From: Trichoplax adhaerens
Lineage: Eukaryota > Animalia > Placozoa
Length of the DNA: 64,000 nt
NCBI RefSeq assembly: GCF_000150275.1
Contig: NW_002060946.1
Span: 2,499,454 to 2,563,453, forward strand
Direction of reading: 5' to 3'
Within the stretch, counting starts at the first letter, position 1, and each line of letters starts with the position of its first letter. This document shows, in pieces, positions 2,084-36,691 of this stretch. The notes under the pieces were generated by a model, which saw only the letters and a list, made by a program, of their open reading frames with translations, was not told where the DNA came from and did no database searches. Both the position numbers and the translations under genes were made by a program.

Positions 2084-2903
2084 ACGTCATCTCGTTGATG
2101 TCACGCCAGCAGTTGTAACATCGACCTCTTGCAGTCAAGGAGAAGGGCGAAAAAAATGGCGACTTCTTTGCTACACTGAACTTAACTTAAACTGGATAGA
2201 ATACTGCTTTGATTTCGACATGGCAGTCAGTGAATTTATTTAAAGCCTTCAATTTTGTCTGAAATGTGATTCTTTTTTTGGTCCTGCCTTTGCTTACAGT
2301 TGATTTTGTAAAGCATTGTGTTTATTCAAGCAGTCGTGGGGTTTCCTCCCTAAAGAAAAAAATGCAGAGAGAGGGAGAGAAAAAAAATTATACAGGATAG
2401 CTAGTTGTTCATTTGGTCTGAGTTTCGACGACGGCAAAGCCTAATAAAGAAATGTTTACTGATTGAAAATCTCTTTTTCAATACCCTGCTAGAGATTGTC
2501 AGATACCGTTAAGCTTATATTTGGGATTGCAACCGTGCGTGCAAATTTTGTACCCGTAGCTTAAATTGATTTGGATACAAGAGCGAGAGTGGAGAAGATT
2601 GAAAATACTCAGAAGGATTCTTGCTAGGTATCATTAATCCTTTCGTCTTTGGAAAGCAAAGAAGTAGAAACGAGAATTTGCTTTCCATTATTCTAGCCAA
2701 GAAATTCAAACGAAAGCCTATCAAGTAAGTGAAATTGCATACAACAACTCCCTTGTTTCGCTTGAATGAGGACGTATTGAAAACTAAAAGATGATGTTAA
2801 GATTGTTTCTTCCTTATCGCACTCATTCTTCGATATTCTTCATTGACAAGAAACTGAAATAGTCATTTCCTTGCACTAATAGGTACAAAATACATTGATT
2901 GAA

Positions 2904-5900
2904 ATGAATGGTACTGCAGGAAACATGATCAAGGAAGGCAATTCTGGATTAATCGATGATTTAGGCGAAGATTATGATATGCTACTAAAAGTCATGATTG
3001 TTGGTGATGCTGGTGTTGGTAAAACGGCTTTGCTGCATCGCTTTAAGAGTAACGCCTACAATGAAAAATATTCCAGTACAGTTGGTGTTGATTTTTTCTT
3101 TAAGACAATCCATTCCGGTGGTAAGAAGATTAAGGTAATTGACAGTCTCATGTTATAATCTACTTTCTAATAAAGTAAACCCTGAATAATTTGATCACCA
3201 ATACAGTACATGATGACTACCATTTTCTTTTCATACTGTACGGTAATTTAATTTATTTATCAGTGAATATTTCATGTAATTTGATGATACTGAAAACTAC
3301 AGTGTTAAAGCACTTGCTATATTATTTTCTTGCATGGTGACATGATGATTATTCCTTTTCTTTGCACTTCCATTTGGAGTGACGCCAGAACTACTCAATT
3401 CGACATAATATTCCGCATTATATCACTATTTAGTTTTGAAAAATAACTACCTACTGGACAGCTACTTTCCCTATTCTTTATCACTCATCAACCTGCTTTC
3501 ATGTTGAGCCTCTTAATAACTTCTAATTTATTCAATCGCTATGTCATTATCACTGGGTAAAATGGAAGATAGCCTAACTAAGGAGTACAGTATTTACCTT
3601 CTTTTTGCAAATCATGATGTATCTTTTACATTATTTGCATGTGTATCATTTCTTAAACTGAATGGACACAGATTGCAGCTTATGCAATGGGAACAATAAC
3701 TTATTGATACTCAGCTTTTCATCTTAGACAAATGGTCCTGTGAAGATTTAATCAGGCGATATAGGAATTAAATTGAGTGTTCATAGACCGTTTATTAAAC
3801 CAATACATTAAATAATGGTGGTAGTTGAACATCGTGAAGCAATCCCGATATTAAATGACTCGTAAATGTTGACATTCTTCTCTAGTAGTGACTTGACTAT
3901 ACTCGAATTTTTATTGATTGTAGTTATCTACCTAGAACATGGCATATAAAGACGTATCCACTACTTTCATAGCCAGTATTATTTATTTAAATTGTTCAAG
4001 GAGAAGTATACTCGGTCCTTTCACGCAATTACTTACTATAAGGGAAGCAATGATTAATTAATAAAGTTAGCCGAGGATTATGAATTATTTTGTACACTTT
4101 ATTATGATAACAGTTTAACTTATCTTAATCAAAAGGAGTATTTCATTCGTCAAGATATTTCCCTGAAAATCAAGTAATCGGTCTTTTCCTTTAATATTAT
4201 ATTAATATTCAGCATATGTAATTATCATAGGTGTTCATCAAATAGTTCATGAATTTCTGATACGGACGATTAGATCTGATGACATTTGCTTCTACATGTG
4301 ATTTCGATAACACCTTCATTGCTCGAGATAACTCTTATATTCTTTGCGGGTAGTAATAATATCGAAGCTGTACTGAATTTTAGAGATTCTTTTGTCGTTT
4401 CGTCAATCCCAACGATTGGCTAATTTTAGATTAACAACTATTATGACAGTAAGAAGTTATTCCAAGATGATTCGTTGCAGCTTATGAAAGTTTTATTTGA
4501 TTTATGTTTGAAGTTGGAACTTACTTTCGATTTATGGAATGCTGTAATATAGACTAATAACAGTGTGCTAGTCATAGCATGAATAACCTCAATGATTTAC
4601 ATGTAAGCTCCTGAAAGCTTAGTTATAGCCGTATTTACGGTAGTACTTTCCTTCTATTAGAATACCGCGCGGTTTGAAACATATGGGAGTACCATGAAAT
4701 TTCATAGACTGTTGCCTTTAAATTTACAAGTTTATTGATTTAGAACTCCATGTACATCTCAATGTAACCTTCATCATTCTATTCTACTGTGCTTAGGTAT
4801 ATTCGTTGGGTGAAATAATACTTTAACTGTATTTGCTTATATTATAATTTAAAAATAGAACTAGTCTTTTATGAATGGAAATATCACTTTGTTACATATC
4901 TGGACAGCTGCTGAATTTTACATCAGTACAAATACTGTATACAGCCTTTATTGTATATAGTAGTATCTATAGTGAGTATGACCCATCAAATCAATCTGTG
5001 ATCAATTAAACATTAGTACACACCATAAAAGCTATACTATACTATATTATCCGAAAGCTATCGTACAAGGTATCGAATTGTGATCTCACGCATTGATACA
5101 TACAAGTATCTTATTTTTCATAAAGTGACTATACATCGTTACATACTGTAATCAAACTTTGTAGAGTTAGACAAAATCAATCTTGGAATTTTTCTATTTT
5201 ATCTGCTGCATAACTATAGTTAAAGCAATCTTTTTAGTGTTGAAGTACGCGCACATCTACGTCTCCTATTTTTTGTAAACGTCTATAAGAAAGTAATACC
5301 ATTAATTAATATTGTTTATGCGTTAAATGCGTATAGTGTATATTTTAGTGCGACTACATACTGTAGACCAATCGATTTATTGTTCTGCTGATTAATCAAT
5401 GAAACATCACGAGCACGTCTATATTTGATGTCAACGTTGATTCAGATATGAACCATAAATTCGTTACAAATTATAGTATTACAAGATTTATAATTTATGT
5501 AGTATTTCATGATTAGTAATCTTGCTGATTGATCTATTTAAATCATTTACGATACTATCTGTAAATAAGAATATTAGCAACCCACCTAAAAGAGTCACAG
5601 AGTTGATTCTTCCGGAATGGTTTCTATAATTTATCATATAGACCTAATAGATCCCGTTATGCAATCTAAACGTAATCGCAGCTTTGTTATTATAACCTGC
5701 AATCATCGTCATATTAAATCTTGACTGGATTAGATTAATTGGTATTACGTTAATAACTACCAAGCTTATTTACAATACGCTGTCACAGGCATTTTTATAA
5801 TTAGTACGTATTTATTCATTTATATTTTATTAATTATACTGTACATCTTCCCTCTGTACTGTAACAGCATACTGGCACGGAATATTACAAAGTATTGAAA

Positions 5901-8594
5901 CGAAGGTTACCGTATCTTTCTTAATACCTCCATTCGAGTATATCTGGCTAGTCATAGATTAAGATGGGATGATACTAACTCACCACACAATAATTAAAGA
6001 ATATTTTTGTATTGAAAAGATACAGTATCGAATCCTTAGTAATTAAATTATCATCTTTAGAAACCTCTATTTGCTAGTGCATCCTATGCCTATTTCCTGT
6101 GCTATTACTGATTATCTATATTGTTATATATGTTTATAACAAATTACAGAAGCAAGAAGATTGCAATATCGCGAACTTTTTGCAGTTGAGAAATCCAATT
6201 TTGCACTGCATATTTCCACAACGTTACTTATATGTGCGCTGCTATAAATATCTCATGATATGATATTGACTAAATCGCAAGGATTGTGATGTATTGCAAT
6301 CTGCTATATTCTATTTTCATTATTCGTTTACTTTTAGTAATTGGGCAGTTTTCTAAGGTAGTTTTTTTACATAAATGAATTTTCTCTCTACGAGCATATC
6401 ATAGCATTACTCAATCACTACTGTATTAGTAAAGCATCAGTCATAATTATAATTGGACATTTAATTTTACTTAAAATCTTCAGAAGATGAAATATAGCGT
6501 TTTATTAAAGCTTTTCATTAGGATAGTATTCGTCCATAATAGTTTTACGCACACTTTTAAAGTAGGATCGAATTTATATCGCTACAAAATTACGTACGTG
6601 CTTCACATTTGGCAATCCTATAAATTTTTAAATTCGAGTGAATACAATAAAATTAATTGTATTTGCAAACGTAAAATACAGTTTTTGTCGATGACTACCT
6701 ACAATCGACCATGCTATGTAATGAACAGACTAGTTAACCTTTTATTAAAAATGATACTTTTTTTAAGTTACTATAGCCGTATTTCTCATTCTTCTCGTTG
6801 CGCCTCCTCAGTCATGATTTTAGTTAAACTAGTCAGAAAATATTAAAAAAAGTTAATATGGCTAGAGATTTCTGAAGATCTAGTATCACATCCTCACTGA
6901 AGCTAATTTATTATTCATGTATGCGTATATATCCATAAGAGCTTCTCTTTTACTTTTCGTTAATCAGTTTCTAAAGTTTCAATTACGAAAGTAATGGCAA
7001 AATTTAATATAATCAAGTTTTTGCTCTATTAAAATATGTTAATTACTAACGCCTGAGAAACTTTTCTTGACACCAAATACTAAAAAATATTAAAAATTTC
7101 AACACTGGAAGCACGTAAAAAATGCACTTGTTGTAGGCGTTAATAGCTGCTCCACCAAAATACAAGACAAAGCATAATAAAGAGAATAGAATGTTTAGGT
7201 TTTTGATGAAAAAATTGGCAGTGTATTGTATAGTTGATGAGTTTAAAATTTGATTACGTAAGAGTCGAAATGATTGACATGCTAAAAATAGTTAATATTT
7301 ACCCATTGCAGTCGAATTCCTTATGGACAGTGGCTATGATGATAGTAAATTAGATCTAACGTACAGACTTTTGCATATTTATTTATGTATAATAATTATA
7401 ATTGTACTTTTATTGATCCAATAGTTACAAATTTGGGATACAGCTGGCCAAGAAAGATTCCGTACTATAACACAAAGTTACTTTAGAAGTGCCAATGGAA
7501 TAATAATCGCCTTCGACATTACACGTAAAGAATCTTTTTTGAATGTGCCCTTATGGCTAGAAGATATTAAAAAATATGCCGGTAAAAATGTAGTCTTGTT
7601 ATTAGTAGGTAAGTCAAACATCTTACAGAGGGTAATTCGTAATATTTCAATTATACAATTAATATTATATGTAAATATGCCATCTGTTATGGATAGTAAT
7701 ATACGATATCTGAGACGTAGTAGTGCAATCTCAATATATTTATGCAATTTAAAGCTGCATAGTAGCTTATTGATATATCTCTATGGTAATTACTTCCTTT
7801 ATTATACAGTATACGCGTACGGTATACATATATATACATGGATATCAACTGTACGCTTAGAACAGCTGTCGTAAAGTTGAATACTTTTACAATATAGTCG
7901 CTACAACATAGTACCTTTTAAAAACTCACTTTCTCCTCAAGTCAGCCGACAAAGTTTATCCTCTTTCTCTACATTGTATAATATAAATTTTATAGATATA
8001 AAAACAGAAAATTCCTAATACAAATAGAAGATCATTTAATGCTAGTTATTGCAACTTAAAAATTAAAATAATCAACTTCATTGGAGTGAATACTTCATGA
8101 GATAATCGCCCAGTTCACTTGCTATGATAACATATTAAAACCTTTCAATTTATGCGTAATATTCATACACAATTAGATTTCATGTATTTATGTGCTTTTC
8201 TAATTTGTGACATATAATAATCATAATGCATTAGATAGCTTGAAAGAGTATTCTATAGTTACTGATATTGATAAGACATAGTACCATTCTTCGAATAAAT
8301 TTCTTATAATCCTTTCTTAATTTTCTTGTTTGGAATGAAGGAACTAAAACTGACTTAGACGATTTACGGTCTGTTGAACTGAGTGATGTTAGAGCATTTG
8401 CAGCACATCATAACATTTTTGATGTAATTGAAACTTCAGCTAAGACGGACTGCAATGTGGAAGATGCATTTTATAAAATGGCTTTCGAACTGAAAAGAAT
8501 TCATGGTGATAATAACCCGACAATTAATCGATCTCAAAGTAATATTTTACTGCCATCTGAAGAAAAGTCTAAATCAAGTTGCTGTGGCATTTAG
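2904..8594 (+). CDS. RAB43: Rab43/Rab19-like small GTPase; exons 2904-3134, 7425-7608, 8341-8594; probable 5'UTR intron 2725-2882
   Basis: Spliced ORF contains GDAGVGKT (G1), [53 protein letters not shown] and C-terminal SSCCGI*. Introns are GT-AG with consistent phases. Motifs recalled as most like the Rab43/Rab19 subfamily. Confidence 0.9.
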
Positions 8595-11540
8595 TTTGGC
8601 TGCAAATTTTCTTGTTGGCAGTATAGTAACATTCGGTACACCGTATACGAGTTTTTATCGCCAATCAACGTTTTTTATTTCTGGAACTGATTGATTATTA
8701 TTTCCCGTAATTAACTTTAATAGCTGTTCTCTAAATACTGGCTATTAACTAAAAATATACCGAATATATATATTTTGTTTATCGTATATATTGCTTAATT
8801 ATGGAGTAATAGATTAATTAATTATTGGTAACGTAAATATCTCGTGAATGTGATATCGATCGCGATCAGAGTTCCTTTTATTTGATTGGAACCAATTCTA
8901 CAGACCTTATATATTCTCTGCCGAATCCAGAGTTTTAATCAAAATTGATAAATTCTAAATATTCAATTATTTGGAAGATGAAGTGATTATTAAAGATTGC
9001 ACTACGTAATAATTGTTCCGTGTATTATTTAAAATATTCTTATTTGCTCATGAAATCGGCTGGTAACGCGAACTTAGTGTTAATTTTTGCCGTTGACTGG
9101 CATCAGTTAATTGACTAATATTTTGGATTAACCATATTAATATGCTAAGGCTCAAATGGCATCGATATAATAATTAAAGCTACTATGTTAATATCTATTT
9201 AACATAGTTTGGTTATCATTTATAACTTAGATGCGAGCACTACCCTACTACTTCTTTCTTTTCTGGTATTAGTTCTAAAAATCGATCCTTGTTGTTTATT
9301 AGGGTATTTATATATTTAATTTATATCTCTTACAATTATTTACCTTGTTGAGTGGATTTTCTTTCACTGTACTATTATGACCGTTATTACTATTATTATT
9401 TATGTCGAAACAACTTCAATTTAATTCATAATTAACTTCTATCCGTCGATCTCAATTTAAATAGATTGTCATTTTAATCCTGTTTACTAATATCTAAAAA
9501 GTCATTTCTTTGTGACTGTATCAATGATTGGTAATTTGGCTGTTAGTCTAAATATAGCCATATAGAAGTGATACTCACTAATTGTACCTTATGAATAAAT
9601 AAATTCTTCACTTAGAAAGATAAACGATCTAGGTATGATAGCTATGAATTAATTGACCTTAGATTGAGTTAATATTTGCATTTACCTCAACTTTTCTATC
9701 TCAGTTCTAAGAATTTACGATTATACGCGTATGTTGGTATTGATTGTCGTTACTTTGCTTTTAATTGATAAAAAGCGTAAAATTATGATATTGTAGAAAA
9801 TAATTTCCTTAGATGAGCTCTAAATTGTAACAAAGTTAGCGTATTGAACATCTTATGTTACGGCAGATATTAAATAGCTAGTCAATATAGCGTGCTATGC
9901 GCTAAGTTTCAAATGATACTGTATTCCTAAAAGATCAGTTTAAAACATTGCCAAAGTTTAAGCTACTATGATGAATATTATTCGATTATATTCACAGCAA
10001 ACAAATGTAAGATAACGTGAAAGACATAGAGATTTGTGCAATAACTATAAGCAAGGTGATATATAATGCGAGTTACATTACTATTTATTAGGAATTATCG
10101 CTAATTAATATTAATAAAAGCGTAAAATGCATGTAACTGTACTTGACGACTAAGCAGACTTGTAAAGTAATCTGTTTTGATAGTCATAGATCACCGTGTA
10201 ATCAAATGAAATTGTAGCATAAATTATTGAAATATTTTAACTTCCGTCTATAGTTAATTAATTCGTTAGTAAATTGATAACGCTAACATGCTTTTCAGTT
10301 TAACCACAGATTAAAACATTTCATTCTTACATATGAATGTAATTATTCAACGAATTAAGGAAACTGATGACAGTTATTTAAGTTAATTGCTACTCTTCAT
10401 CTATACTTCCCGATGTTTATCAATTTGTTAATTTTCATCGTATGAATGAAAGCAATTACAGGTGTACCGGTACTGAATAGTAGTACATACCGGTAACATC
10501 CGGCAGAAATTTCAGAGATAGCAAAAATACAAATAAATAAAAATGGAATAAAATGCATATGTATAATACATTACTAGATGAATTGACCTACAATACTACA
10601 ATAATTAATTATAATGAAGCTTGATGACTCGAAATGTTAATAGATATCCACACGTTAGCATTATAGTTCTGCAGTTCGAATTCGCTGGTTTAATATTAGA
10701 TGTTAACCGAAGAGAGAGTTGATCTGATAATGCAAAGAAGATGCAATATCATTCAAAAAAGTAAAGGTATACACGTTTTATCTACTACTTTATGTTCATC
10801 GACAAATTTGATCTATTCCTTGAGCAAAGATTCAGCATAAATCCTTTAGCATAATTTGGAATTTACTATATTAATATTGAACGTTAAGAGGCTAGAATGA
10901 AAGGGATTAACACCGTTGAAACATGAACACTAGTTCCATACTATCGTCTGCTTTATTATTCATTGATAAATTCAATATATTTTATGTGACGATTTAGTCT
11001 GGCTATTAGAATAATGTAGATACATCAAGTACGTACGAGCTCATGAACAGTTATGTACCAATAGGATTATACATTATTTTCTTGCATTTATTCCATCAAA
11101 AGGAATATTTCAACATTTGACTCGATGATATGGTCACTGATAATTAATCATTCTGTAATGTCTAGTCAATGTAGAGAAATTGTTGACAATTGCTGCATTT
11201 AGGTAATTCCTTGCTTATTCTCTATTCATAACGAATAATCTTTATTAAATGAAAGCAATGAATACGAAAAATCTTATTTTACTATCAATTGCCATGCTTC
11301 TCTGGGGATGACCCTTTATTTGTATATCTGTAAATACCAGTGCGTTATTCATGATGAAACAATTTACTCCTTTTTCATGTTAATCAATTTCTCTGCTATT
11401 GTCTTGTTAATAGGATTGCAATGAATTAAAAGTGATTGATCTAATTTGATTTATGTCTATCCAAGATTAATTTTTATTTGCACTAGTTTGAACTTGATTG
11501 TATTTCCTTCTAAGCAACAATCGTCTTGATTTTATGGACG

Positions 11541-11554
11541 GTTTCTATGGTAAC
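11541..11554. promoter_or_regulatory. RFX X-box (GTTTCTATGGTAAC)
   Basis: Exact match to the X-box consensus GTHNYY-AT-RRNAAC, ~525 bp upstream of the ATG at 12079; a likely 5'UTR splice acceptor lies at 12053-12054. Confidence 0.6.
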
Positions 11555-12078
11555 TAACCATAATGTCCTTAGTTATCCTTGGGCCCTTTTTTATCAACCA
11601 CTTGTTGTTGTCGTCGTCGATTAAACCCAACTTGAGATATAATTTATTCCAGTTGACATAGTATGGAGTAGCCTAGCACGATATTTAATTTATCTTTTGT
11701 AACATTTAATAGTTTGTGACATTGTTAATCGGCTGCCTGTTCTCAACGACACCCATTGATATAATTAAGTGGACTGTAAAGTCGCTTTTAGCACCCATCA
11801 ATTTGCGTCTAAAATTGATTTTTTTAGAATAAGAAGAAAAGAGATACTTGTTCGTTCATATTTCACTCATCAACATCAAGTGGTATCAATTTTAAAGAAC
11901 GATCGCAGGGGGTTTCTTTAAATATAAACTTGAAATTGTATTAATCGAATCAAGAGTATTGAAATTCTCTTCCATTCCCATTGCGTTGTTGCTGATATTG
12001 TCGTTTATTAGCCAAAACAATCTATTTTAATTATTTTATACTATCCATTTCTAGTACTAATAGAGGAATTAGGGAAAG

Positions 12079-14031
12079 ATGGTTATCGATGATGAAACTG
12101 ATAACCAACAAAGCAATGAAATACAAACTAAATCAACTATGGGAAAAGAACCTATAAGTGATGGTCAAGAGCCATTGAATAATGGAGACCAAGCAAATTA
12201 TTACCAACGACTACAGTCACAATTACAAAACCAGGGTGCTCAAGATGGCATTGATCTTCAAGCTATTTTCCAATCTGAATCACTCGATTTTAAATCAGCA
12301 GACGATGTACTATCTGAATTTAAAGATGATAACTATGTTATAGAGAGAAAAGAAGAACCCATCCAGCATCATTCTCCAACCCCATCATCGAATATCGATC
12401 ACGATCAAAATCAACCTGCAAAAAACGATGATTTAAATGATTTCTACCAAGACGACGCTTATCAAGATAATATAAAACAGAATAATCATGCTTATGCTGA
12501 AGATCAATACGAAGATGATTTCGAGGAATTAATCGAAGAAGCAGAAACAGAGAATCAACGAATGATTACCAAGAAACAGTCGCAGGATATTGTTGAACAA
12601 GCAGATTTACATCCGACCCAACATGTGGTAGAAGAGACAATTACACAGCAGCATACAACCCCATTAGGTGAAAACGGAGAAGCATCGCAACCCGTAGTTG
12701 AAGAAATAATAACACAGCAGCATACAACCCCATTGGGTGAAAACGGAGAAGCATCGCAACCCGTAGTTGAAGAAATAGTAACACAACAATACCAGGCTCC
12801 ATTAGGCGATGATGGAAGTGTTAAGCCTAGCAGTGTTGAAAATCTTAGGCAAACATCACCATCGCATCAAGTTGAAATAGATATCCAACCGGACAAAGGC
12901 AGCATTCACGATGATCATTATAGTCATCATAGTGACGTTAATATAGCCAAGGATAACACAAATCAAGACGAGGTTAATTTTCATTCCCACGATACTATTA
13001 ATAGTAATCGATCATCACCAATTCCTACCCATCTTAATCAAGACGATAAAGAAGAAAAAGATAAAAATGATCAACATTCCATCCGATCCAATTCATCTAG
13101 CCATCATGGTATTGTAGAAAAACGACAAAATGATGAACAAGAAAATTGTCCAACAATTCATATTGAACAAGTTGATGGGCAACAACATGAAAGTAATGAC
13201 GATGATTTAATAAAATCGGAAAATTTAATACAAAGTGAAGTTAATCAGCCTGATGCAGAAAATAAAAATGATATTTCAGAACAATCTGTTAGTAGCAGTA
13301 GTCAAGATGAAGAAATGAATCGATTGAGGGAATTACTAGATCGAAATAAAGCCACAATGGTTCAACAGCATGATCAAATGCTATTAGATATGGATAATAA
13401 ATTACGAGAAAAAGACGCTGAAATAGAACAATTGAAAGGGTTGTTGGAAAAGCATAATTTAGAAGAAGCCAGTGAACAACAATATCGCCTATTGCAGTAT
13501 GAAAAACAAGTTGAGCAAAAAGATAATGAAATACAACAACTAAAGAGTTTACTTGACGAATTAAAGCAAGATGTTAATTATACTGAATTAATCCATTTAC
13601 GTGAGCAAGCTAATAGAGCCAATGCTTTAACGGTTCAGCAAGAATACTTATCACGGCAAATTACGGAATTTACTGAAATGGAATTATACTTAAGGGCGCA
13701 ACTTGAAGAGCTACAAACTAAATTAGATGTAACCAATAGAGAAAATACCTCACTAAGTAATAAATTGAAAGAATATAAACAAGGCGATGAAGTAAAAAAT
13801 CAGAAAATCGTTGAAATGGAGGATGAATTAGCTTCAATTAATGACGAAGTACAACGATTACAAAATATCGTTAGTGAAGCAGCAAGTAAAGGTAGGCGAA
13901 AATCTCTCGGTAAATCAAGTCGAATAGACCATTCTGTTCCACAACCTGCACCTACAGAGAAAAAAGTCAGTCATCAAAGTAAAGATCAGCGTAATAAACA
14001 ATCTAATTCACGATTTTGTAGCGTAATGTAA
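12079..14031 (+). CDS. Uncharacterised 650-aa protein: acidic disordered N-terminal region, C-terminal coiled coil, basic tail, CaaX box (CSVM)
   Basis: 1953-nt uninterrupted ORF; D/E/Q/N/H-rich first ~410 aa; heptad L/E/K/Q pattern ~aa 410-600; KGRRKSLGK basic patch; ends SRFCSVM*. Confidence 0.9.
   Translation: MVIDDETDNQQSNEIQTKSTMGKEPISDGQEPLNNGDQANYYQRLQSQLQNQGAQDGIDLQAIFQSESLDFKSADDVLSEFKDDNYVIERKEEPIQHHSPTPSSNIDHDQNQPAKNDDLNDFYQDDAYQDNIKQNNHAYAEDQYEDDFEELIEEAETENQRMITKKQSQDIVEQADLHPTQHVVEETITQQHTTPLGENGEASQPVVEEIITQQHTTPLGENGEASQPVVEEIVTQQYQAPLGDDGSVKPSSVENLRQTSPSHQVEIDIQPDKGSIHDDHYSHHSDVNIAKDNTNQDEVNFHSHDTINSNRSSPIPTHLNQDDKEEKDKNDQHSIRSNSSSHHGIVEKRQNDEQENCPTIHIEQVDGQQHESNDDDLIKSENLIQSEVNQPDAENKNDISEQSVSSSSQDEEMNRLRELLDRNKATMVQQHDQMLLDMDNKLREKDAEIEQLKGLLEKHNLEEASEQQYRLLQYEKQVEQKDNEIQQLKSLLDELKQDVNYTELIHLREQANRANALTVQQEYLSRQITEFTEMELYLRAQLEELQTKLDVTNRENTSLSNKLKEYKQGDEVKNQKIVEMEDELASINDEVQRLQNIVSEAASKGRRKSLGKSSRIDHSVPQPAPTEKKVSHQSKDQRNKQSNSRFCSVM
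12625..12816 (+). repeat. In-frame 69-bp (23-aa) coding tandem repeat, ~2.8 copies
   Basis: VVEE(T/I)(I/V)TQQHTTPLGENGEASQP units start at 12625, 12694 and 12763; the third is partial and diverged. Confidence 0.9.
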
Positions 14032-15716: not shown

Positions 15717-18700
15717 TTAACTATCTGAGCTTTCCAACCATTTTCTTTTTTTGGCAGTATTAAGATACGGCCTAATTTTCCATTCAACATCTGCTGTATT
15801 TTCTTCGTCGATAGTGCCTAATCTTATTGCAAAGACTATAAAAAAACCAAGAAATGCACAATTATTCAGTACTAATGAAATAAATATAGAAATTTTAGTT
15901 TATAAAATATTGTACAGGCAAGTGTTAAATTCAGTATCATAGCATATAAATTTGTAAATTACGTGCAGTATATATTAAGTAATCAATATTTAAAGGTGAT
16001 ATACACTTAATGTCTACATATTTATCTATCATACGAACGTTTCATTTCAAATCTTGGACCAACTTCCATTAACTCGATATTGCCTTCGGCTCTTTTGTAA
16101 ACGTGATGTCTACAGATGTTCCGTAAAAAGTTAGAAAAACATCTAATGCATGCTTATATATATATTTTTGTAATACAGCATACTCTTATAATGCCGCCAA
16201 ACAAACCTAAAAGAGATAAAATCATCATCATTTGCAAAGGTGATAATTCGTCGTGTGCTTTCTTTTGGAACTGGAAATAGGTACCGTAATATATTTTTAA
16301 CCTATAAATTGGAGTCCATTAGAAGATCCATAAAACTTTAAAGCAGGGTACTGTATAGTCTATCTTAGATATATATTTCAAAAAAATTTAACAACGTACC
16401 CTTAAGCCAAGTTTAGATGAAAATTTATGAAAGATTAGATGTGGATAGGCTTCAGACATAGGACCAATGTTTTCAATATCGTGTCTCATTACAACATTAG
16501 ATAGAGTAAAATAAGCCGTTGGACCGTAAGGAAGATGAGATACAATCATACCATCTATAAAATGATACGGAATATTAAATAAATATTGTTGATATTTCGA
16601 TTTATAGATAAATCTGGTAACTCTTTAAGCATATATATACGACGATACATTTAATGTATAGCCGCTTAAAAGATATTTTACCTGGTTGACCTCTGTGTTC
16701 ATGTACAATAATTAAATCAGTCACATTATTCGCTCTGCAGGCTTGAATTAGTTCGCTCAGTACATGATTACCGCGATTCATTCGTTGACAATTTGGAAAT
16801 ATTAATTTCATTTCCTTCAATAAATAAAAATATAAGATTTTCATTACATTAATGTATGTCATAAGGCTTATTTCTAAAATATGAGAATGGCTATATCGAA
16901 TGAAATACTGTATCGGGTTAATATTCTGAATTAAGTTTTGTACGACTGTATAGGTAGTTAACTCTTAATTCAATAAACGATGCTGTAATGGTATCAGTGG
17001 TTGTGATGATGACGATGTAGATAATTATTTTTATTCAGTTTATATATCTTTATTTGCAGCAAGTATTGCAAATACCTACTGCAGTAATATGAAATACCGT
17101 ATACATTATGCAGGAACATGTATATCTAATTGCAACGAATGCACAAATATAGTTATTCAGTTTGCAAACCTTCGCGAATTGCTTTAATTTTGAACTAGGT
17201 TCATGAGATGTTGTGATCATTATACTTGGATCATTTACGCCAGCCCATTTATATTCATCATCACGATCTTCTATATATTCTTAATTGATCGAAAGTGATA
17301 TCGAAATCAGCATTAAAATTCTTATTACGCTAATAGTAAATCGATCATAGTTGTCTCCATTTATGCTATCGCACTCGGGTTCTAATAGAATGTGCGCTGC
17401 TGCATTCTACCCTTTCACTTACACTCAGAAAATCTTCTATATAATTAGAATAGCATAGGCATGTATTACAAGGTGAAAGTTGATATCTACTGGTATTGAT
17501 ACACTTGTAGTTGATTTCGTTAATACAATTTATCTGTACTGGATTATGTCAGAGATGAAATGAAGCTGTAATTATTCAATTATGATAGTCATTTTATAAT
17601 TCGTACAGTATTATTTTCTAGAGATTATCCATCCGAAGTCTGTGATATAACCAGACTATACAGAAGTTTGTATATCAATTCGTAGTAAGTTCTTAGCATA
17701 GATTAGTGGATTTTGTCTGCAAATTGTCATTGCACCAATTGGCTAGATAGTTCTTTAACGTTTAAATTAATGATACTTACTATCGGTATTTCTATCATCA
17801 AATTCAAGCTCTTTACGTAGTTCTGCTTCTTCCTTTCTTAATTCTGTTGGGATTGGCTTGCCCGCTAGAGCATAGTAACGATCGATCATTAATTACTACT
17901 GTGTTGATGGTGTAATAAATGCTACGTATGTGCAGAAACTTGAAAAGTCACGGCAGCAATTCCAAAACCAAGTGATACTATGTTGAATTACCTTTCAATC
18001 TCGGTTTACAGCTAGCATATCTTAACTAAAATTTCTATAATTAAAATTAGGTTCCTAAGAGTAAAATACTAGCTAAATGATGTCTGTGCCTTGCATCTAC
18101 GTACTGATAACATGCATATTTAGCTCAAATTTAGTAAAAATTTTAGTTTGCTGCTAGATTATCTATGATTACAATTATTTAGTTCGCGAAAGTACAGCTG
18201 TACTTTCGCGATACCCTACGATACTTATTGCATCAGCACATGCATAGTAGTGCACAATATACTTATTTAGGTCCAATACACTGCAATTTCTGTTCGTAGA
18301 CCTTCCATGATCAGCACTACGTTCACGAGAATACAAGCAATAACTTACGATATTTACGCTTTGTACAGTATCTGTATACTAGTACGTATACAAAGTACTT
18401 AGCTTAAATGTGTTATAAATTAGTTTACTATTCAATTAGCTAACTACGATTACTACAGTTGGTATTGGTAAAAATGTATGTGATAGTATATTAAGACACC
18501 CACCCGTATTTCCATTCACATATTCGTATGCATAATATTTAGCTTACATACGTTATAATTTAGTTTTAACGTTCTATTAGCTAACTATGATTATTGCAGT
18601 TGGCGTTGGCAAAAATGTAACTGATAGCTTTAATATATTAAAGGCACACGTATATCTCTCGACATACCCATAAATAAATATTTAGCTCAAATACGTTATA

Positions 18701-19234
18701 ATTTAATTTTACTGTTACATTAGCTAACTACTATCGCTACAGTCGCCATTAGTCAAAGTGTGAGCGACAACTTGTTGAGGCAGACTGCAGGGATACGAGG
18801 ATCTCTGGCTACACATGCGTTATATTCAGCTCAAATACGTCGCAATATCAGCTTTTACAACTGGGTTAACAAATCGCAGAAAGAGGTTACTTACAGTCTA
18901 TGGCTGCCTTTAATTTCTTCTTCTTTTCATGGATAGTTCTCTCCTGCTCTTCCTTAGCTTTCCTATAAATATACTCCTTCCTTTCACGTACTTGTCTTCT
19001 TAGCTACAAATAAAATTAAGGTCGTGCTTCAAGATCAGTCATTGTGACACTTGAGTAATTTACATCATTACATTTATAACAATGCAAAAGTAACGATTTG
19101 ATATAAATTCTGTTCAGTATAAAGAGAGGAAGAAGGTAGGAGAGGGAGAGACAGTAAAAGAGAGAAAGAGAGAAAGAGAGAGAAAGGAAAGCAAGTTTAA
19201 ATCTCGAAGTGCAATGGCGAGCCTCTCTTACCAT
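15717..19234 (-). CDS. IMP4: U3 snoRNP protein IMP4 (Brix family); exons 19234-19232, 19003-18895, 17864-17781, 17279-17170, 16814-16682, 16554-16400, 16301-16207, 16109-16039, 15835-15717
   Basis: Spliced protein M|[16 protein letters not shown]...[12 protein letters not shown]...[26 protein letters not shown]...RHDI...[12 protein letters not shown]...[14 protein letters not shown]; all phases consistent. Confidence 0.95.
18399..18845. repeat. ~140-144 bp minisatellite (3 full units plus a partial) in IMP4 intron 2
   Basis: Units TTAGCT.A.AT.(C/T)GTTATAA.TTA...TTAGCTAACTA..AT..(C/T)T.CAGT start at 18399, 18539, 18682 and 18826; more degenerate copies near 18120. Confidence 0.8.
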
Positions 19235-20731: not shown

Positions 20732-22915
20732 TCACTTCTTAAAAACCAAACTTTTGCAAGTGTAGGCGTAGTGTCCTCGACTTCCACAACGGTAACACAC
20801 TATATTCCGGCAATCGCGAGCGTAATGTCCTCGGCCTTTACAGCGATAACATTGTACATCCTCATCAACCTTTTTCGAAATGCTACTTTCTGTGATACGC
20901 GTTAACTTATTTATTCCAGCCTTGGTGCCTTGCAAATTCTCATAATTTAAGCCATTGTTTCGATTATTGATCGCCTTACCATGCGTCATTGGTTTATCAA
21001 GTACTTGCTCGGTTACGGGTTTATGGCTTAATAACGTATCTTCTGCAATCAGTATTGGCTTAAAACACGTACTTTCATCTGCGTGTGTATATAAGTTATT
21101 ATTATACATTCTATCAGTTTGCAATTTGTCATGCACTTCTCTTTCCAGTCGAGGTCTTTTGTGAAGGTTTTCTTCACGAAGCAGTTCCTCCGATTTGTTA
21201 GTTTGTGCATTGTCGTCAATTTTCTTGTATATCGTTTCTAGATTATTTCCAGTTTGTGGTGTTACCTCCTCATTTTTTTCATGTTGCGGAGATAATTTTT
21301 CTATCATTTAGTAATGTACAAAATAGATGATGATACATTAAGTTATGAAAAAGAGTGAACTTTTCATATTGATCATCTGGCAAATTATGACTTATTATTT
21401 TCGCCGGTTAAGAAATACTGTAGTTTATAGGACAGATAATAAAATTCAGAAATGAAAGTTTATGAACAATTTAGAAAGTTTGGATCTTTCAGCTCTTTAC
21501 ATTTTATAATGTAAGCAATGTTATTACATTTATAAAAATGATATTAAGAGGTCTAAGGTTTACAATTAGTAAAAATAATTAATTGCTATATATAGCATGC
21601 AAGCTTATATCCTTCTGTAGATCTGAAATTAATATACGGTACTAACCCATTAAAGATTTAGAAGTAATAGTAACATTTCTGTTCTTGCAATTTTGAAGAT
21701 ACGTATCTCCTTTTTGGTCTTTGCATTTTTCTCCTAAATGGCTAGCTCCGTTGCAGCTATAATATTGACCTGCAAATATTACCAGACAAACGATATTTCA
21801 AAAAGTAAGATAAAGATGCAATGAGATTCACTACTATCTACGCCTCTACAAATCCGGAATCAACTACCAGCCTACAGCACTACAGATTTATGGGCATTGC
21901 AAAGATTTCGATTCTTACCATCTTGAAGATAGGTGTTTCTTCTCGGTTCTGTACAGTGGCTCGCTAAGTGGCCTACTTTATGGCATTTATAACAGCGCCG
22001 ATCTATGATAGTATAAGAGCAACCAAGTTCAACAACTACTATAGTATATTTATCCAAGCGTATGCTTTTTTAGACCTGGAATGTGTCTCATTTTTACGCG
22101 TATGTAGGAATAAAATTGTGATGAGATATGAATGTATTGTGTAAATAAATTGGAATGTTTTAAGTGTTTAAAATTCAAACCCAGTTGCGTAAGTAAACTA
22201 CGCTGTAGTACCTTAAGTAGTGTATCTACAAGGACTACTACCTAAGAGTATATCTATTATTAAAAAAATTAGTTGTCATTAAGGCACTACAATATACGTA
22301 TGTTGAGAAGTCTCTAACCTTCCGTATAATTTGGACAATTGATAGAAGAGTGATTTGTTAAACCACATTTATAACAAGCCGGAGCTACATTTAATAATTA
22401 TAATTTGATCATTAGGTTAATGATACTCTATCATAACAAGTGATAACGCTACACTACTGTCACTTTAAGTTGGACTAGTTGAGTTAATGTATAGGCAAAT
22501 AGATTTAAGTATGTGTACATCGTAACAATACGAAAGCAACAAGATACTGATTCATGATAGACGGTTGTACTGTACGCCAAATTTTATTTTATCCATCGTA
22601 TCACCGAAACACTAGCGATATCATTGAACAATAATGAGATACCAGAAGCAATTTTGTTGAATAAGTCGTCTTCAAATGGACAATAGGCACTAACGTGGCC
22701 AACATTACCACATAGAAAGCAACGGCAATCTAATGGTATTACAAGGAAAGAATACTAGTCAATAATCGTAGAATGTAATCAGTGTCTTACAGTAACAGTA
22801 GTTGAATCTTAATTACAGTATATATTGCCTATATATATTACTATTATTCTGCTACAAGCTATTCATCATCGATGATCAGCTTACCTCTTAGATTGTAGTA
22901 CTGAGCTCCAATCAT
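20732..22915 (-). CDS. Multi-CCHC zinc-knuckle nucleic-acid-binding protein (~319 aa); exons 22915-22885, 22729-22643, 22384-22319, 22002-21919, 21769-21647, 21300-20732
   Basis: Five CX2CX4HX4C knuckles (CFLCGNVGHVSAYC, CYKCGLTNHSSINC, CYKCHKVGHLASHC, CYRCKGRGHYARDC, CYRCGSRGHYAYTC) plus one degenerate (YYSCNGASHLGEKC); five GT-AG phase-1 introns give an open 960-nt frame. The start exon is least certain. Confidence 0.8.
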
Positions 22916-27101: not shown

Positions 27102-28953
27102 ATGACAACAGGCGATATCGGAAGTGATATGAAATCTAAAAAGTCCAGAATCATTCCACCTGCTCTGGACATCTGTTCTCATTATTCCACTGGTATCAAC
27201 AATCCTTTACCAAGTCCTAATAATCTAAGTTGGCTAACCGATTTGGCAATCATCGCTACTAGTCCGCAAAGCCCGTTGATGCAAGCTACCTACCAAAATG
27301 CTGCCAAAAATCGAGGTGCTTACCTATTTTAATTAATCAACAACCGATTCCTTTATCTTCGATCGGAATTTGTTGTCAGTTACAAGTAAATCATAACTAG
27401 TGCAGTGATGATAGCGGACTGTAGAGTGGGATTATTCAATCATTATCGACTGTAATTGACACATACAATGGATATCACTATTTTTTTAAAAAGCTTACTA
27501 TTATTTGTAGATCAAATAAATACCCTTGAAGATCAATTAAAAAGGAGAGGTAATAGTGATTATAATCTATTAGGGAGTGGTCAAATTATTCGAAAAGAAG
27601 CAATGGAATCAAAGGGAGAATTTGGTGGCGATCATGCTTCCATTACTCCGTCTTGGTTGTGCTTCATGAAGGGCACTAAAATTAAATTTTCAGCATCTAA
27701 TCAACAAGTATCATGGATCGCTGCTGAAGAATTAGGTAAAAACGATAAGCTAGTGAGGCAATTGGGCCAGATAGAGGGGCCTACAACTTATGCACCGTTC
27801 GGGTTGAAGCTTATGGAAGTAAAGGAGATTAAAGGCAATTCAGATAAACGAAAAAGAAAAAATTTATTAATTATGCGATTCTCATCAACTGTCAATGGTC
27901 AGCCGCGAATAGCTGCTAGATGCCTAGCAGACCATCCTTTTTATGTAAAAGAAAAAGGCTGGTCATCATTTTGTCCGGAATTAACCAATTCACAATATGG
28001 AATTAATAGCAAATTCTTGAAAATCAATGATGTTTGTATACCGCCTCCATCAAATGCTGAAGCTTTCAAGTTCGATAAGTGCGTATATACATTTAACCAC
28101 CTTTGTACATTTATTTAATTTAAATATGTAGCATAATTCACGATGCTTTAATCAAATGTTAGCTTTCTTGTTGAATGATATCCTTTATATACTTACTTTT
28201 CTTGTAGATTAAATTTAACGGCAATGGACTCTTCTGCTGCTTTAACGTTAAGTCGGATGGGGATGGCGAAAGTACGGAACTTATACGCTATAGCTAATGT
28301 TTATTTTTTTATTTGTGTGTGTATGTGCTTTATATTTTGATGGTATGAAACAGCTACGCATGCAATTCGTATTATTTGTTATCGAATATTAATAATAGTC
28401 ATGTTATACCTATGCTTTACCAGAAATATAAATCGGATGAGTCGCCTATGGGTTCTCCTTCCAAGAAAAGCAATGGAAGCGATAACGGTAGCAATAGCTC
28501 TAACCAGCAAAGTCGGATGCAATCAGATCGTGCAAAACGACCTATGAACGCATTCATGCTATTCGCCAAAAAGTATCGAGTAGAAATTACTCAAGCACAT
28601 CCTGGCAAGGATAATAGGTATCAATTTTTAGCATTATCATATTTTATTGCCTAATGGACGTTGCGCTGCAGGCAGATTAAATATTAATCGATTACCGTTT
28701 TTTCAGGGCCATAAGCGTTATTTTAGGTGATAAATGGAAATCAATGGAGACGACAGAAAGACAGCAATACGCCGAAAAGGCAAGAATTCTAGCTGAAGAA
28801 CACAAGAAAAATTTTCCTGATTGTTGGAAGCGTAAAAAGACATTAAAGGTGACTATTTCGTATCTATTTTGCTCTGTTTTAATAAGTTTACGCACTTTAT
28901 ATTAAATTTATCAAAATTTTGGATTAAATGACTAATAGAAAAAGGTTAGCTAG
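27102..28953 (+). CDS. HBP1: HMG-box transcription factor HBP1 (AXH + HMG box); exons 27102-27315, 27511-28078, 28208-28271, 28424-28617, 28707-28848, 28939-28953; probable upstream exon ending at 24209
   Basis: HBP1-type motif WLTDLAIIATSPQSPLMQ; AXH domain (WLCFMKGTKIKF...DHPFYVKEKGWSSF.P..T...YG); MDSSA; HMG box KRPMNAFMLFAKKYRVEITQAHPGKDNRAISVILGDKW...PDCWKRK. Exact start and last micro-exon are less certain. Confidence 0.92.
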
Positions 28954-34227: not shown

Positions 34228-34347
34228 TCATCTGTCTAGAGATATCTGGTCTAGTTTTGAGAAGAATTTTCTGCATGATTGCAATAATTAGTGAAAGTAC
34301 TTAATTATCTGACTCGTATGAATTAGATCCAATTATCTAGTGTCTCT
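34228..34347 (-). pseudogene. Duplicated, decayed copy of the COG5 terminal exon
   Basis: Aligns by eye to 43428-43590, including acceptor TTTTAG|AGAGACACT and the TCTCTAGACAGATGA end; reads RETLDNWI* (premature stop) and has an internal deletion. Confidence 0.8.
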
Positions 34348-34888
34348 CTAAAATTGCCAGACAGGGGAGTAATTCCAGCATTTAGATCTATTATTAAAAT
34401 ACTTCACTTATCAATGATTCAGTCTATGTAATGATTATGTATTGGAAACTGTTTTGAAATAACAAGTTAGAAAAAATTTAATTCAATGTTCCTTTTATAG
34501 ATAAATTTACAATTTATTATTATATATATCTAACCAAAAATCATCCAGTAAGTATTTAAAACCTTATTGTAGAGAAAACTAATAAAGAGCATCAAATTAT
34601 ATCATCTACAAAGAGTACACATGTTTATATAACAATATTAATGAAATTATTGGTGTTTTTAACCGATAAATAAATTATATTGGCTGTCGAATATTCTTAG
34701 GTCTGAGCTTGTATAACTTTGAGCTTTACTTTAAGTTACTTTAGAGACGCATGTAATACAAGATTAATTAGGATCAGAACACGATCTGACCTATGAGCTC
34801 GCTTATAAATTAGGTAGATATCGAAATCCTAATGATAAACTATCTACTGTATAACAATCAATGTCATAAATTTATACTTTACTATGAT

Positions 34889-36539: not shown

Positions 36540-36691
36540 AAATAAATGATGAGTTTTACTTTAGTACGCATAATTTAGATAGTCTAACTACAATCAGGCT
36601 AACCTTAAGCTAATTTATGATTGCACTACTACAACGTAACGTAATAAATATTGTTATGGTTACTAAAATAATGGCAAGAAAATTGGTCGTT

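What the first reader, a model, noticed from the sequence alone, without database searches (positions are those of the whole stretch)
11541..14031. Orphan farnesylated coiled-coil protein with an RFX X-box and a PDE6D-type ciliary CaaX signature: candidate undescribed ciliary protein
Seen: a perfect X-box GTTTCTATGGTAAC at 11541, a near-X-box GTATCCATAGCAAT at 14580 downstream, and a protein ending in a basic stretch plus S-R-F-C-S-V-M. Established: RFX factors bind X-boxes to drive ciliary genes; CaaX ending in Met is a farnesyltransferase substrate; high-affinity PDE6D cargo sent to cilia (INPP5E, ending STICSVS) has Ser at -3 and a large hydrophobic residue at -1 of the prenylated Cys. Here -3 is Ser and -1 is Phe. 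Inference: two independent signals, one in the promoter and one in the protein, point to a lineage-restricted membrane-tethered ciliary or basal-body scaffold that I cannot assign to a known family.
Basis: partly seen in the sequence, partly recalled or inferred. Interest (0 to 1): 0.8.

Follow-up and report, generated by a model that had tools for sequence, protein, structure and literature searches.

The report
Prenylated coiled-coil protein, candidate ciliary
This Trichoplax gene is not an orphan: it belongs to an unnamed animal family of lipid-anchored coiled-coil proteins whose conserved promoter site and conserved tail both hint at, but do not prove, a role in cilia.

Summary
The window is Trichoplax sp. 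H2. The ORF 12079-14031 (+) is TrispH2_004724, 650 aa, ending NSRFCSVM. The X-box GTTTCTATGGTAAC at 11541 is real. Alone it is no more than chance (about 0.8 expected in 64 kb). However, a second placozoan whose protein is only 56% identical has it at the same distance from the ATG, differing only at degenerate consensus positions. The near-X-box at 14580 is chance.

"Orphan" is wrong. Profile searches found collinear relatives in hemichordates, a sea cucumber and unidentified marine eukaryotes (hhalign 97.8%, E 1e-12). All have an acidic disordered N-terminus, a roughly 100-residue coiled-coil core and a CaaX end. Twelve of 12 distinct tails read S-[K/R]-x-C-a-a-X. A Brix gene sits tail-to-tail downstream in both Trichoplax and the sea cucumber. 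The sea cucumber locus has three X-boxes (4 strand matches against 0.14 expected).

There is no Pfam, PDB or fold match and no literature. The tail fits the published PDE6delta high-affinity rule: Ser at -3, hydrophobic residue at -1.

Best reading: an RFX-driven, prenylated dimeric scaffold of the ciliary or periciliary membrane. Expression, transcription start and localisation are all untested. This is a new family built from known kinds of signal, of moderate interest.

The parts
11541..11554 (.). X-box (RFX-type palindromic site) GTTTCTATGGTAAC, 538 bp upstream of the ATG
   Evidence: Exact consensus match. Identical in T. adhaerens (L002 9463). Conserved as GTTTCCATAGCAAC at -558 in the second placozoan (L001 3622), with changes only at degenerate positions.
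11594..11608 (+). Conserved 15-bp block TCAACCACTTGTTGT. It is the longest exact match in the 700-bp upstream alignment. Candidate core promoter or start of a non-coding exon 1 (inferred).
   Evidence: 15/15 identical between the two placozoans against 50% background identity. It lies 53 bp and 46 bp from the start of the X-box in the two species.
11642..11661 (+). Conserved block ATTTATTCCAGTT... (18 of 20 identical). Function unknown.
   Evidence: It starts 101 bp after the start of the X-box here and 100 bp after it in the second placozoan.
12048..12054 (+). Candidate 3' splice acceptor (tttctag) of a 5'-UTR intron, 24 nt before the ATG (inferred)
   Evidence: Sequence. Similar pyrimidine-AG sites lie 12-44 nt before the ATG in L001, Ptychodera, Apostichopus and L018. 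In L018 the intron is proven by the cDNA-like contig L008.
12079..14031 (+). Single-exon CDS, 650 aa plus stop: TrispH2_004724 (RDD43802.1), ortholog of T. adhaerens TRIADDRAFT_55416
   Evidence: There is an in-frame stop 9 nt upstream of the ATG.
12079..13296 (+). Residues 1-406: acidic N-terminal region (net charge -63), mostly disordered, with short conserved motifs
   Evidence: In the AF2 model most of residues 1-406 have pLDDT below 50, apart from a few short helices.
12499..12603 (+). Residues 141-175: conserved acidic helix (QYEDDFEELIEEAE...). It is placozoan-specific.
   Evidence: AF2 models a helix at 141-175 with block pLDDT up to 90. It is nearly invariant between the two placozoans. 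It was not seen in relatives from other phyla.
12631..12785 (+). 69-bp tandem duplication (2.2 copies, 94% matches) encoding a 23-aa unit VVEExITQQHTTPLGENGEASQP
   Evidence: The extra copy is absent from the second placozoan.
13297..13893 (+). Residues 407-605: two long helices (407-498 and 501-605), a coiled coil
   Evidence: AF2 pLDDT is above 90. The heptad register is constant from about 505 to 605.
13579..13902 (+). Residues 501-608: the family-defining core (VQxEYLxRQ...E.YLR...L..KLK....D..K...I..ME.EL)
   Evidence: hmmsearch hits with E from 3e-7 to 8e-4 in 1.84 billion proteins. hhalign of the placozoan profile against the other phyla gives 97.8%, E 9.9e-13, over 108 columns. Alignments A4 and A8.
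13894..14016 (+). Residues 606-646: disordered, basic, Ser-rich linker with RRKS conserved in placozoans. It ends in S644-R645-F646.
   Evidence: S at -3 and K/R at -2 are present in 12 of 12 distinct family tails.
14017..14028 (+). CaaX box C647-S-V-M650, a predicted farnesylation site
   Evidence: Sequence. The same four residues end Rheb, a farnesylated PDE6delta cargo (primer sequence in PMC5512577). A Cys four residues from the end is invariant in the family.

Best explanation
The gene encodes a member of an unnamed, ancient animal family of prenylated coiled-coil proteins.

Shown:
- The CDS is a single exon.
- The protein has a roughly 400-residue acidic disordered N-terminus, a roughly 200-residue helical rod whose last 100 residues form the conserved family core, a basic disordered linker, and the tail S-R-F-C-S-V-M.
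- Relatives with the same layout and an invariant S-[K/R]-x-C-a-a-X end occur in hemichordates, a holothurian and unidentified marine eukaryotes.
- An X-box upstream is conserved within Placozoa and recurs at the holothurian ortholog.

Inferred mechanism:
- An RFX factor binds the X-box next to a conserved promoter module. It switches the gene on in ciliated cells, probably through a non-coding first exon and a 5'-UTR intron.
- The protein dimerises through the coiled coil.
- Cys647 is farnesylated. In the other phyla, where X is Leu, the Cys would be geranylgeranylated. The last three residues are then clipped and the new end methylated.
- The lipidated tail, with Ser at -3 and Phe at -1, is carried by the prenyl chaperone PDE6delta and released by ARL3-GTP at the cilium.
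- The rod then sits with both lipid anchors in the ciliary or periciliary membrane. It presents the conserved core and the long acidic arm to partners.
For: - Identity and gene model.
- Architecture.
- Family: an exhaustive profile search found 8 hits in all. Five of them (P0006, P0007, P0008, P0009, P0011) align to the coiled-coil core, are collinear and end in CaaX. A sea-cucumber member was added. Ten further eukaryotic loci came from a metagenome scan. hhalign gives 97.8%, E 1e-12.
- Tail: S(-3) and K/R(-2) in 12 of 12 distinct sequences.
- Orthology: supported by the Brix-domain gene lying tail-to-tail downstream in both Trichoplax and Apostichopus.
- X-box in Placozoa: conserved at the same distance from the ATG, with changes only at degenerate positions. 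It lies just upstream of the two best-conserved blocks of the upstream region.
- X-box in Apostichopus: sites at -1231, -95 and +2809 relative to the ATG. That is 4 strand matches against 0.14 expected, and 0 of 100 shuffles reach this.
- PDE6delta rule: S(-3) with a hydrophobic residue at -1 gives nM affinity and ARL3-specific ciliary release. K(-3)/S(-1) of Rheb, which has the same CSVM box, does not (PMC5512577).
- Geranylgeranylated RPGR also reaches cilia through PDE6D (PMC6678300).
- All sequenced metazoans examined have RFX and IFT genes. RFX regulates ciliary genes in worm, fly and human (PMC2873420).
Against: - No expression, transcription-start or localisation data could be reached. 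The X-box is 538 bp from the ATG and its distance from the true start is unknown.
- One X-box in 64 kb is what chance gives.
- Neither hemichordate ortholog has a convincing promoter X-box. The GTTGCCTTGG... site lies in an 81%-identical block that looks like a coding exon of the neighbouring gene.
- In the one unidentified species with promoter sequence, the consensus X-box lies in the last intron. Only a 13-mer variant lies upstream.
- RFX factors also have non-ciliary targets.
- The -1 residue is T or S in 4 of 12 tails. Phe at -1 and geranylgeranyl versions of this tail have never been measured on PDE6delta.
- Presence of PDE6D, ARL3 and ARL13B in Trichoplax was not tested here.
- No family member has been reported in any ciliary data set that I could search.
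Confidence: 0.4

Rival explanations
1. Same protein family and the same prenyl anchor, but not ciliary. On this reading it is a general plasma-membrane or endomembrane coiled-coil tether or scaffold. The S-[K/R]-x-C tail would serve another purpose, such as a phospho-switch, another prenyl chaperone or lipid-headgroup contact. The X-box would be used by RFX or another factor for a non-ciliary programme.
For: - Everything structural fits equally well.
- X-boxes are not consistently present at orthologs in hemichordates or in the unidentified species.
- The -1 residue varies.
- The basic Ser-rich linker with RRKS resembles the electrostatic or phospho-regulated membrane tails of small GTPases (own knowledge).
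Against: - The X-box is conserved in Placozoa within 50%-identical flanks.
- X-boxes are enriched at the holothurian ortholog.
- Ser at -3 is invariant, which is exactly the residue that hydrogen-bonds to Glu88 of PDE6delta.
Confidence: 0.38
2. A nuclear-envelope protein of the lamin-B or Kugelkern type. The farnesylated C-terminus plus a basic patch would target a coiled-coil protein to the inner nuclear membrane.
For: It combines a coiled coil, a basic patch (KGRRKSLGKSSR) and a CxxM end. Drosophila Kugelkern has this general layout (own knowledge, not tested).
Against: - There is no intermediate-filament rod or lamin-tail match in Pfam or PDB.
- The basic patch is not a canonical K-K/R-x-K/R nuclear signal, and it is not conserved in the family.
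- Most relatives end in CaaL, not CaaM.
- A conserved X-box is not expected for a lamina gene.
Confidence: 0.08
3. A mitotic or kinetochore farnesylated coiled-coil adaptor in the manner of Spindly, CENP-E or CENP-F.
For: Those proteins are farnesylated coiled-coil proteins (own knowledge).
Against: - There is no sequence or profile similarity to them.
- Their CaaX boxes end in Q, not M or L (own knowledge).
- The coiled coil here is C-terminal and short.
- No motor or dynein-adaptor motifs were found.
Confidence: 0.03

Closest known systems
INPP5E, GRK1 and RPGR: prenylated ciliary cargo of PDE6delta released by ARL3
   Same: They share a C-terminal CaaX preceded by Ser at -3 and a hydrophobic residue at -1 (S-x-I-C in INPP5E, S-x-M-C in GRK1, S-R-F-C here). 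The tail is disordered. A geranylgeranyl form occurs in RPGR, as is predicted for most family members.
   Different: There is no homology outside the tail. Those proteins are enzymes or regulators, not coiled-coil rods. Phe at -1 has not been measured. Binding, release and localisation are untested for this family.
Rheb, a farnesylated low-affinity PDE6delta cargo that is not ciliary
   Same: It has the identical CaaX box, CSVM.
   Different: Rheb has K at -3 and S at -1, which gives low affinity and release by ARL2 as well. Here the residues are S and F. Rheb is a GTPase.
X-box/RFX-regulated ciliary genes (the DAF-19, dRFX and RFX1-4 regulons)
   Same: It has a 14-bp palindromic site matching GTHNYYATRRNAAC upstream of the gene, conserved between diverged species.
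   Different: In C. elegans the sites sit 100-250 bp upstream of the coding sequence. Here the site is 538 bp from the ATG, with a probable 5'-UTR intron in between. RFX dependence has not been shown.
Lamin B and Drosophila Kugelkern (farnesylated coiled-coil proteins of the nuclear envelope)
   Same: All combine a coiled coil, a basic patch and CxxM.
   Different: There is no IF-rod or lamin-tail domain, no conserved nuclear signal, and family members mostly end in CaaL.
Paralemmin (a prenylated and palmitoylated coiled-coil membrane protein)
   Same: Both have a coiled coil plus a C-terminal CaaX membrane anchor and long disordered regions.
   Different: Pfam reported no family for this protein, so no paralemmin-type domain was detected. 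The paralemmin coil is N-terminal, and its CaaX is flanked by palmitoylatable cysteines, which are absent here (own knowledge).

Membership tests
Unnamed S-[K/R]-x-CaaX coiled-coil family (Placozoa, Hemichordata, Echinodermata, unidentified marine eukaryotes) | Conserved coiled-coil core of about 100 residues (YL.RQ...E.YL[RK] ... L..[RK]LK....D..K...I..[ML]E.E) | tested here: met
   hmmsearch E from 3e-7 to 8e-4 against 1.84 billion proteins. hhalign 97.8%, E 9.9e-13, 108 columns. Alignments A4 and A8.
Unnamed S-[K/R]-x-CaaX coiled-coil family | C-terminal S-[K/R]-x-C-a-a-X, reached through a short disordered linker | tested here: met
   12 of 12 distinct sequences. The window protein ends S-R-F-C-S-V-M.
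Unnamed S-[K/R]-x-CaaX coiled-coil family | Orthologous genomic context | tested here: met
   The Brix-domain gene lies tail-to-tail downstream in Trichoplax and Apostichopus, with 64-71% identical exons. It is not seen within 10 kb in the two hemichordates.
CaaX prenyltransferase substrates (farnesylated) | Cys at the fourth position from the end, a small or aliphatic a2, and X = M/S/Q/A for farnesyltransferase | tested here: met
   C-S-V-M, identical to the Rheb box. It is C-I-V-M in the second placozoan. Actual lipidation is not testable here.
PDE6delta high-affinity, ARL3-released ciliary cargo | Ser at -3 and a hydrophobic residue at -1 of the prenylated Cys | tested here: met
   S644 and F646. 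The rule is from PMC5512577. Across the family, -3 is always S, while -1 is F/V/L/I in 8 of 12 and T/S in 4 of 12.
PDE6delta high-affinity, ARL3-released ciliary cargo | Nanomolar binding to PDE6delta, release by ARL3 but not ARL2, ciliary enrichment | not testable with these tools
   This needs peptide binding and localisation experiments. Presence of PDE6D and ARL3 in Trichoplax was not checked: the protein searches were exhausted and there is no literature hit.
RFX/X-box ciliary regulon | Consensus X-box in the promoter region | tested here: inconclusive
   There is an exact consensus at -538 from the ATG. The transcription start is unknown. A 5'-UTR intron is likely, which could place the start close to the site.
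RFX/X-box ciliary regulon | Conservation of the site at orthologs | tested here: inconclusive
   Met within Placozoa and in Apostichopus. Not met convincingly in Ptychodera or Saccoglossus or in the L012 species.
RFX/X-box ciliary regulon | RFX-dependent expression in ciliated cells | not testable with these tools
   No expression data could be reached. The gene identifiers are absent from the searchable literature.
Lamins and the intermediate-filament family | IF rod domain and lamin-tail Ig fold before the CaaX | tested here: not met
   No Pfam hit. No significant PDB sequence hit. No fold hit.
Spindly, CENP-E, CENP-F and paralemmin (other prenylated coiled-coil proteins) | Family-specific domains detectable by Pfam or profile search | tested here: not met
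   No Pfam family for the window protein or for any relative at a curated threshold. None appeared in the exhaustive search.

The most novel reading that the evidence does not exclude
This is an ancient ciliary-membrane scaffold family that predates Bilateria. It is present in placozoans, ambulacrarians and other marine invertebrates, and is so far undetected in vertebrates, arthropods and nematodes. Its invariant S-[K/R]-x-C prenyl tail would show that the -3/-1 PDE6delta/ARL3 sorting code, defined on mammalian INPP5E, was already in use in the earliest animals. It would also show that the code works with either farnesyl or geranylgeranyl.
Probability: 0.3. Interest if true: 0.7.

Novelty: new member of a known kind. 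Interest (0 to 1): 0.5.

Why it matters
If the reading holds, it adds a structural, non-enzymatic cargo to the short list of prenylated ciliary proteins. It would give a natural evolutionary test of the PDE6delta sorting code, because Ser -3 is invariant across phyla while the lipid type switches. It would also supply a marker gene for RFX-driven ciliated cells in placozoans and echinoderms, where experiments are feasible.

There is also an immediate practical point. The public T. adhaerens model (B3RUU4 / XP_002111415) is mis-spliced at the last codon and hides the CaaX box. The hemichordate relatives carry misleading automatic names ('golgin subfamily A member 6-like', 'DNA ligase 1-like').

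Tried and rejected
- Pfam on the window protein and on six relatives gave nothing above curated cut-offs, only generic coiled-coil noise.
- A PDB profile search gave only generic coiled coils, E 0.004 or worse.
- Foldseek of the AF2 model against the PDB gave nothing (best E 5.4).
- No Rfam family and no tRNA lies around the promoter blocks.
- The near-X-box at 14580 was rejected as chance.
- The hemichordate GTTGCCTTGG.. X-box-like site was rejected as evidence. It sits in an 81%-identical block with 3-nt indels, most likely a coding exon of the minus-strand neighbour.
- The upstream small GTPase was considered as a possible ARL gene or as the real owner of the X-box. It is a Rab with a CCGI end, on the same strand, and it stops 2.9 kb before the X-box.
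- P0010, a protist transcript, matches only the 23-aa repeat and was not counted as a relative.
- The word-indexed searches added only one new member.
- The promoter of the L004/L018 species could not be reached, because exon 1 runs off the locus.
- DNA for the P0006/P0013 contigs was not available.
- Literature searches for the gene identifiers, for Trichoplax plus X-box and for Trichoplax plus PDE6D found nothing relevant.
Full report
**Source and gene.** The window is AT-rich eukaryotic DNA, about 33% GC. The ORF 12079-14031 (+) translates to 650 aa and is 100% identical to RDD43802.1, hypothetical protein TrispH2_004724 of Trichoplax sp. H2. It is not human, and no viral or toxin issue arises. 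The T. adhaerens ortholog is TRIADDRAFT_55416 / B3RUU4 (P0003, 663 aa). It is identical except that the old gene model splices away the last codon. Genomic T. adhaerens DNA encodes the same ...NSRFCSVM followed by a stop. The CDS is a single ORF, so no exons had to be joined. For multi-exon relatives I worked exon by exon, by reference, or used contiguous cDNA-like ORFs.

**Checking the observation.**
- GTTTCTATGGTAAC sits at 11541-11554 and fits GTHNYYATRRNAAC on both strands. It is the only exact match in 64 kb. Shuffles give 0.78 strand matches, and 20 of 100 shuffles reach 2, so by itself it is unremarkable.
- The downstream GTATCCATAGCAAT at 14580 is one of 20 one-mismatch matches against 18.65 expected. 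It is not conserved in a second placozoan. It is chance.
- The tail S-R-F-C-S-V-M is as described.
- The 'basic stretch' is a 45-residue disordered linker with net charge +8.

**Conservation of the X-box.** A second placozoan is represented by Logan assemblies L001 and L003 and proteins P0002/P0004, which are 56% identical to the window protein. It carries GTTTCCATAGCAAC 558 bp before its ATG, against 538 bp here. Only 0.07 strand matches are expected in that 6.7-kb contig. The 700-bp upstream alignment is 50% identical overall. The X-box differs at three positions, all degenerate in the consensus (Y/Y, R/R, N). Within 120 bp downstream lie the two best-conserved blocks of the whole region, at 11594-11608 (15/15) and 11642-11661 (18/20). 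This is a classical phylogenetic footprint of a promoter module.

A pyrimidine-AG acceptor-like site lies 24 nt before the ATG, at 12048-12054. Similar sites lie 12-44 nt before the ATG in the second placozoan, Ptychodera, Apostichopus and locus L018. In L018 the 5'-UTR intron and a non-coding first exon are proven by the spliced contig L008. So the transcription start may be near the X-box, but this remains inferred.

**Not an orphan.** Pfam finds nothing. An exhaustive HMM search with the placozoan profile against 1.84 billion representatives gave only 8 hits. Apart from a placozoan fragment and a repeat-only protist hit, the five weak hits (E from 3e-7 to 8e-4) are collinear with residues of about 500-610, and every one ends in a CaaX box:

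| Protein | Source | Length | End |
|---|---|---|---|
| XP_070558664 | Ptychodera flava | 267 aa | SKVCTIL |
| XP_006814795 | Saccoglossus kowalevskii | 243 aa | SKSCEIL |
| P0006 / P0013 | echinoderm-like | 411 aa | SKTCVIL |
| P0009 | unidentified | 211 aa | SRTCVIL |
| P0011 | unidentified | 123-aa fragment | SRLCLIL |

- A profile search added an Apostichopus japonicus protein of 501 aa ending SRTCIIV.
- A metagenome scan added ten intron-containing eukaryotic loci with tails DSKVCVIL, DSRICVIL and NSRLCLIL. Two of them are cDNA-like ORFs of 540 and 588 aa that show the same long acidic N-terminus. Their taxa are unidentified.
- Profile-profile comparison of the placozoan alignment with the others gives 97.8% probability, E 9.9e-13, over 108 columns that exclude the tail.
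- Independent support for orthology comes from the Brix-domain gene, which lies tail-to-tail just downstream in both Trichoplax and Apostichopus, with 64-71% identical exons.
- None of the relatives has a Pfam family, a significant PDB relative or any literature under its identifiers. Their public names are automatic and misleading.

**Anatomy.** AlphaFold2, run on a shallow alignment, gives these segments:
- Residues 1-406 are essentially disordered apart from a few short helices. The clearest is a conserved acidic helix at 141-175.
- Residues 407-498 and 501-605 form two long helices with pLDDT above 90.
- Residues 606-650 form a disordered tail.

The N-terminal region has net charge -63. 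The heptad register is constant from about 505 to 605, which is the family core. The N-terminal motifs are placozoan-specific; other phyla share only the acidic, disordered character. A 69-bp tandem duplication at 12631-12785 is recent.

**The tail.** Over 12 distinct sequences:
- Ser at -3 is present in 12 of 12, and Lys or Arg at -2 in 12 of 12.
- The -1 residue is F, F, V, V, V, V, I or L in eight tails, and T, T, T or S in four.
- X is Met in placozoans, which predicts farnesylation. It is Leu in most others, which predicts geranylgeranylation, and Val in the sea cucumber.

Fansa et al. 2016 (PMC5512577) showed that PDE6delta affinity is set by positions -1 and -3. Ser -3 hydrogen-bonds to Glu88, and a hydrophobic -1 residue sits in a hydrophobic pocket. 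INPP5E (S/I) and GRK1 (S/M) bind at nM affinity and are released only by ARL3, in cilia. Rheb (K/S) and transducin gamma (K/G) bind weakly. Rheb ends in the very same CSVM box as the Trichoplax protein, so the difference lies exactly at -3 and -1. Geranylgeranylated RPGR also uses PDE6D to reach cilia (PMC6678300). The -1 half is only a tendency.

**X-boxes at other orthologs.**
- Apostichopus has consensus sites at -1231 (followed by a GC-rich stretch, plausibly the promoter), at -95 and at +2809 relative to the ATG. That is 4 strand matches against 0.14 expected, and none of 100 shuffles reaches this.
- Saccoglossus has a perfect palindrome 1.2 kb downstream of the CDS (2 strand matches against 0.21 expected). 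It also has GTTGCCTTGGCAAC at -1886. That site and its Ptychodera counterpart at -5311 lie in an 81%-identical block with 3-nt indels, most likely a coding exon of the neighbouring gene. I do not count them.
- In the one unidentified species with promoter sequence (L012), the consensus X-box is in the last intron. Only a 13-mer Drosophila-type variant lies about 370 bp before the ATG.
- So the association holds in two independent lineages out of about five that could be examined. This is more than chance but not universal.

**Interpretation.** The gene and the prenylated coiled-coil family are solid. Regulation by RFX is likely in Placozoa. All sequenced metazoans examined have RFX and IFT genes, and RFX controls ciliary genes in worm, fly and human (PMC2873420). 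FoxJ1 is present in Trichoplax (PMC3493443). Ciliary localisation by way of PDE6delta and ARL3 is a coherent hypothesis that fits two independent conserved signals, but it is not demonstrated. The main rival is the same membrane-tethered scaffold acting elsewhere in the cell. Nuclear-envelope and kinetochore analogies have little support.

**Limits.**
- All three word-indexed protein searches and the single exhaustive search were used. No exhaustive search with the broadened family profile could be run, so absence from vertebrates and other phyla is not established.
- No Trichoplax expression data, genome-wide X-box calibration or check for PDE6D/ARL3 orthologs was possible.

Noticed in passing
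L002 10001-13066 (T. adhaerens) versus window 14017-14031: The public T. adhaerens model (B3RUU4 / XP_002111415, 663 aa) splices out the final Met and stop and adds 14 unrelated residues. This hides the CaaX box. The genomic ORF reads ...FCSVM followed by a stop, as in sp. H2.
   Followed up: yes
window 12631-12785: There is a recent 69-bp tandem duplication (94% matches) encoding a 23-aa VVEE.I.QQH..PLGE.. unit. A protist transcript (P0010, MMETSP) carries a similar repeated ..PVVEE.I...H..PLGED.. unit (E 6.5e-4). This may be convergence or a shared short linear motif.
   Followed up: partly
window 15717-19234 (-) and L007 16933-21506 (-): A Brix-domain ribosome-biogenesis gene lies tail-to-tail downstream of the family gene in both Trichoplax and the sea cucumber. 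This is microsynteny kept between Placozoa and Echinodermata.
   Followed up: yes
window 11595-11602; L001 3669-3676; L012 about 479-486; L007 about 8817-8823: The 8-mer CAACCACT lies 46-55 bp after the X-box in both placozoans. It overlaps the X-box-like 13-mer upstream of the gene in L012. Apostichopus has AACCACA about 47 bp after its -1231 X-box. This is a post hoc observation of unknown significance.
   Followed up: partly
L007 12810-12823; L006 14964-14977: Exact X-boxes lie 1.2-1.3 kb downstream of the stop codon of the family gene in Apostichopus and Saccoglossus, between convergent genes. The Saccoglossus site is a perfect palindrome, GTTTCCATGGAAAC. They could be enhancers, promoters of unannotated genes, or chance.
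   Followed up: no
window 31359-41841 (-): There is a tandem array of four CECR6/TMEM121-family membrane-protein paralogs, each an intronless ORF of 182-298 aa. The copy at 34889-35437 is N-terminally shorter.
   Followed up: partly
window 2895-8594 (+): The upstream neighbour is a multi-exon Rab-type small GTPase ending in CCGI. It is on the same strand and stops 2.9 kb before the X-box.
   Followed up: partly
window 20732-21307 (-) and 27456-28118 (+): Two further genes were seen: a zinc-knuckle (zf-CCHC) protein gene and an AXH-domain (ataxin-1/HBP1-like, with an HMG box in the T. adhaerens model) gene.
   Followed up: no
L005 4540-4860 and L006 7965-8285: The two hemichordates share an 81%-identical block upstream of the family gene on the opposite strand. 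It is probably a coding exon of a 427-aa protein with no Pfam domain, arranged head-to-head with the family gene, and it contains an X-box-like GTTGCCTTGG.. sequence.
   Followed up: partly
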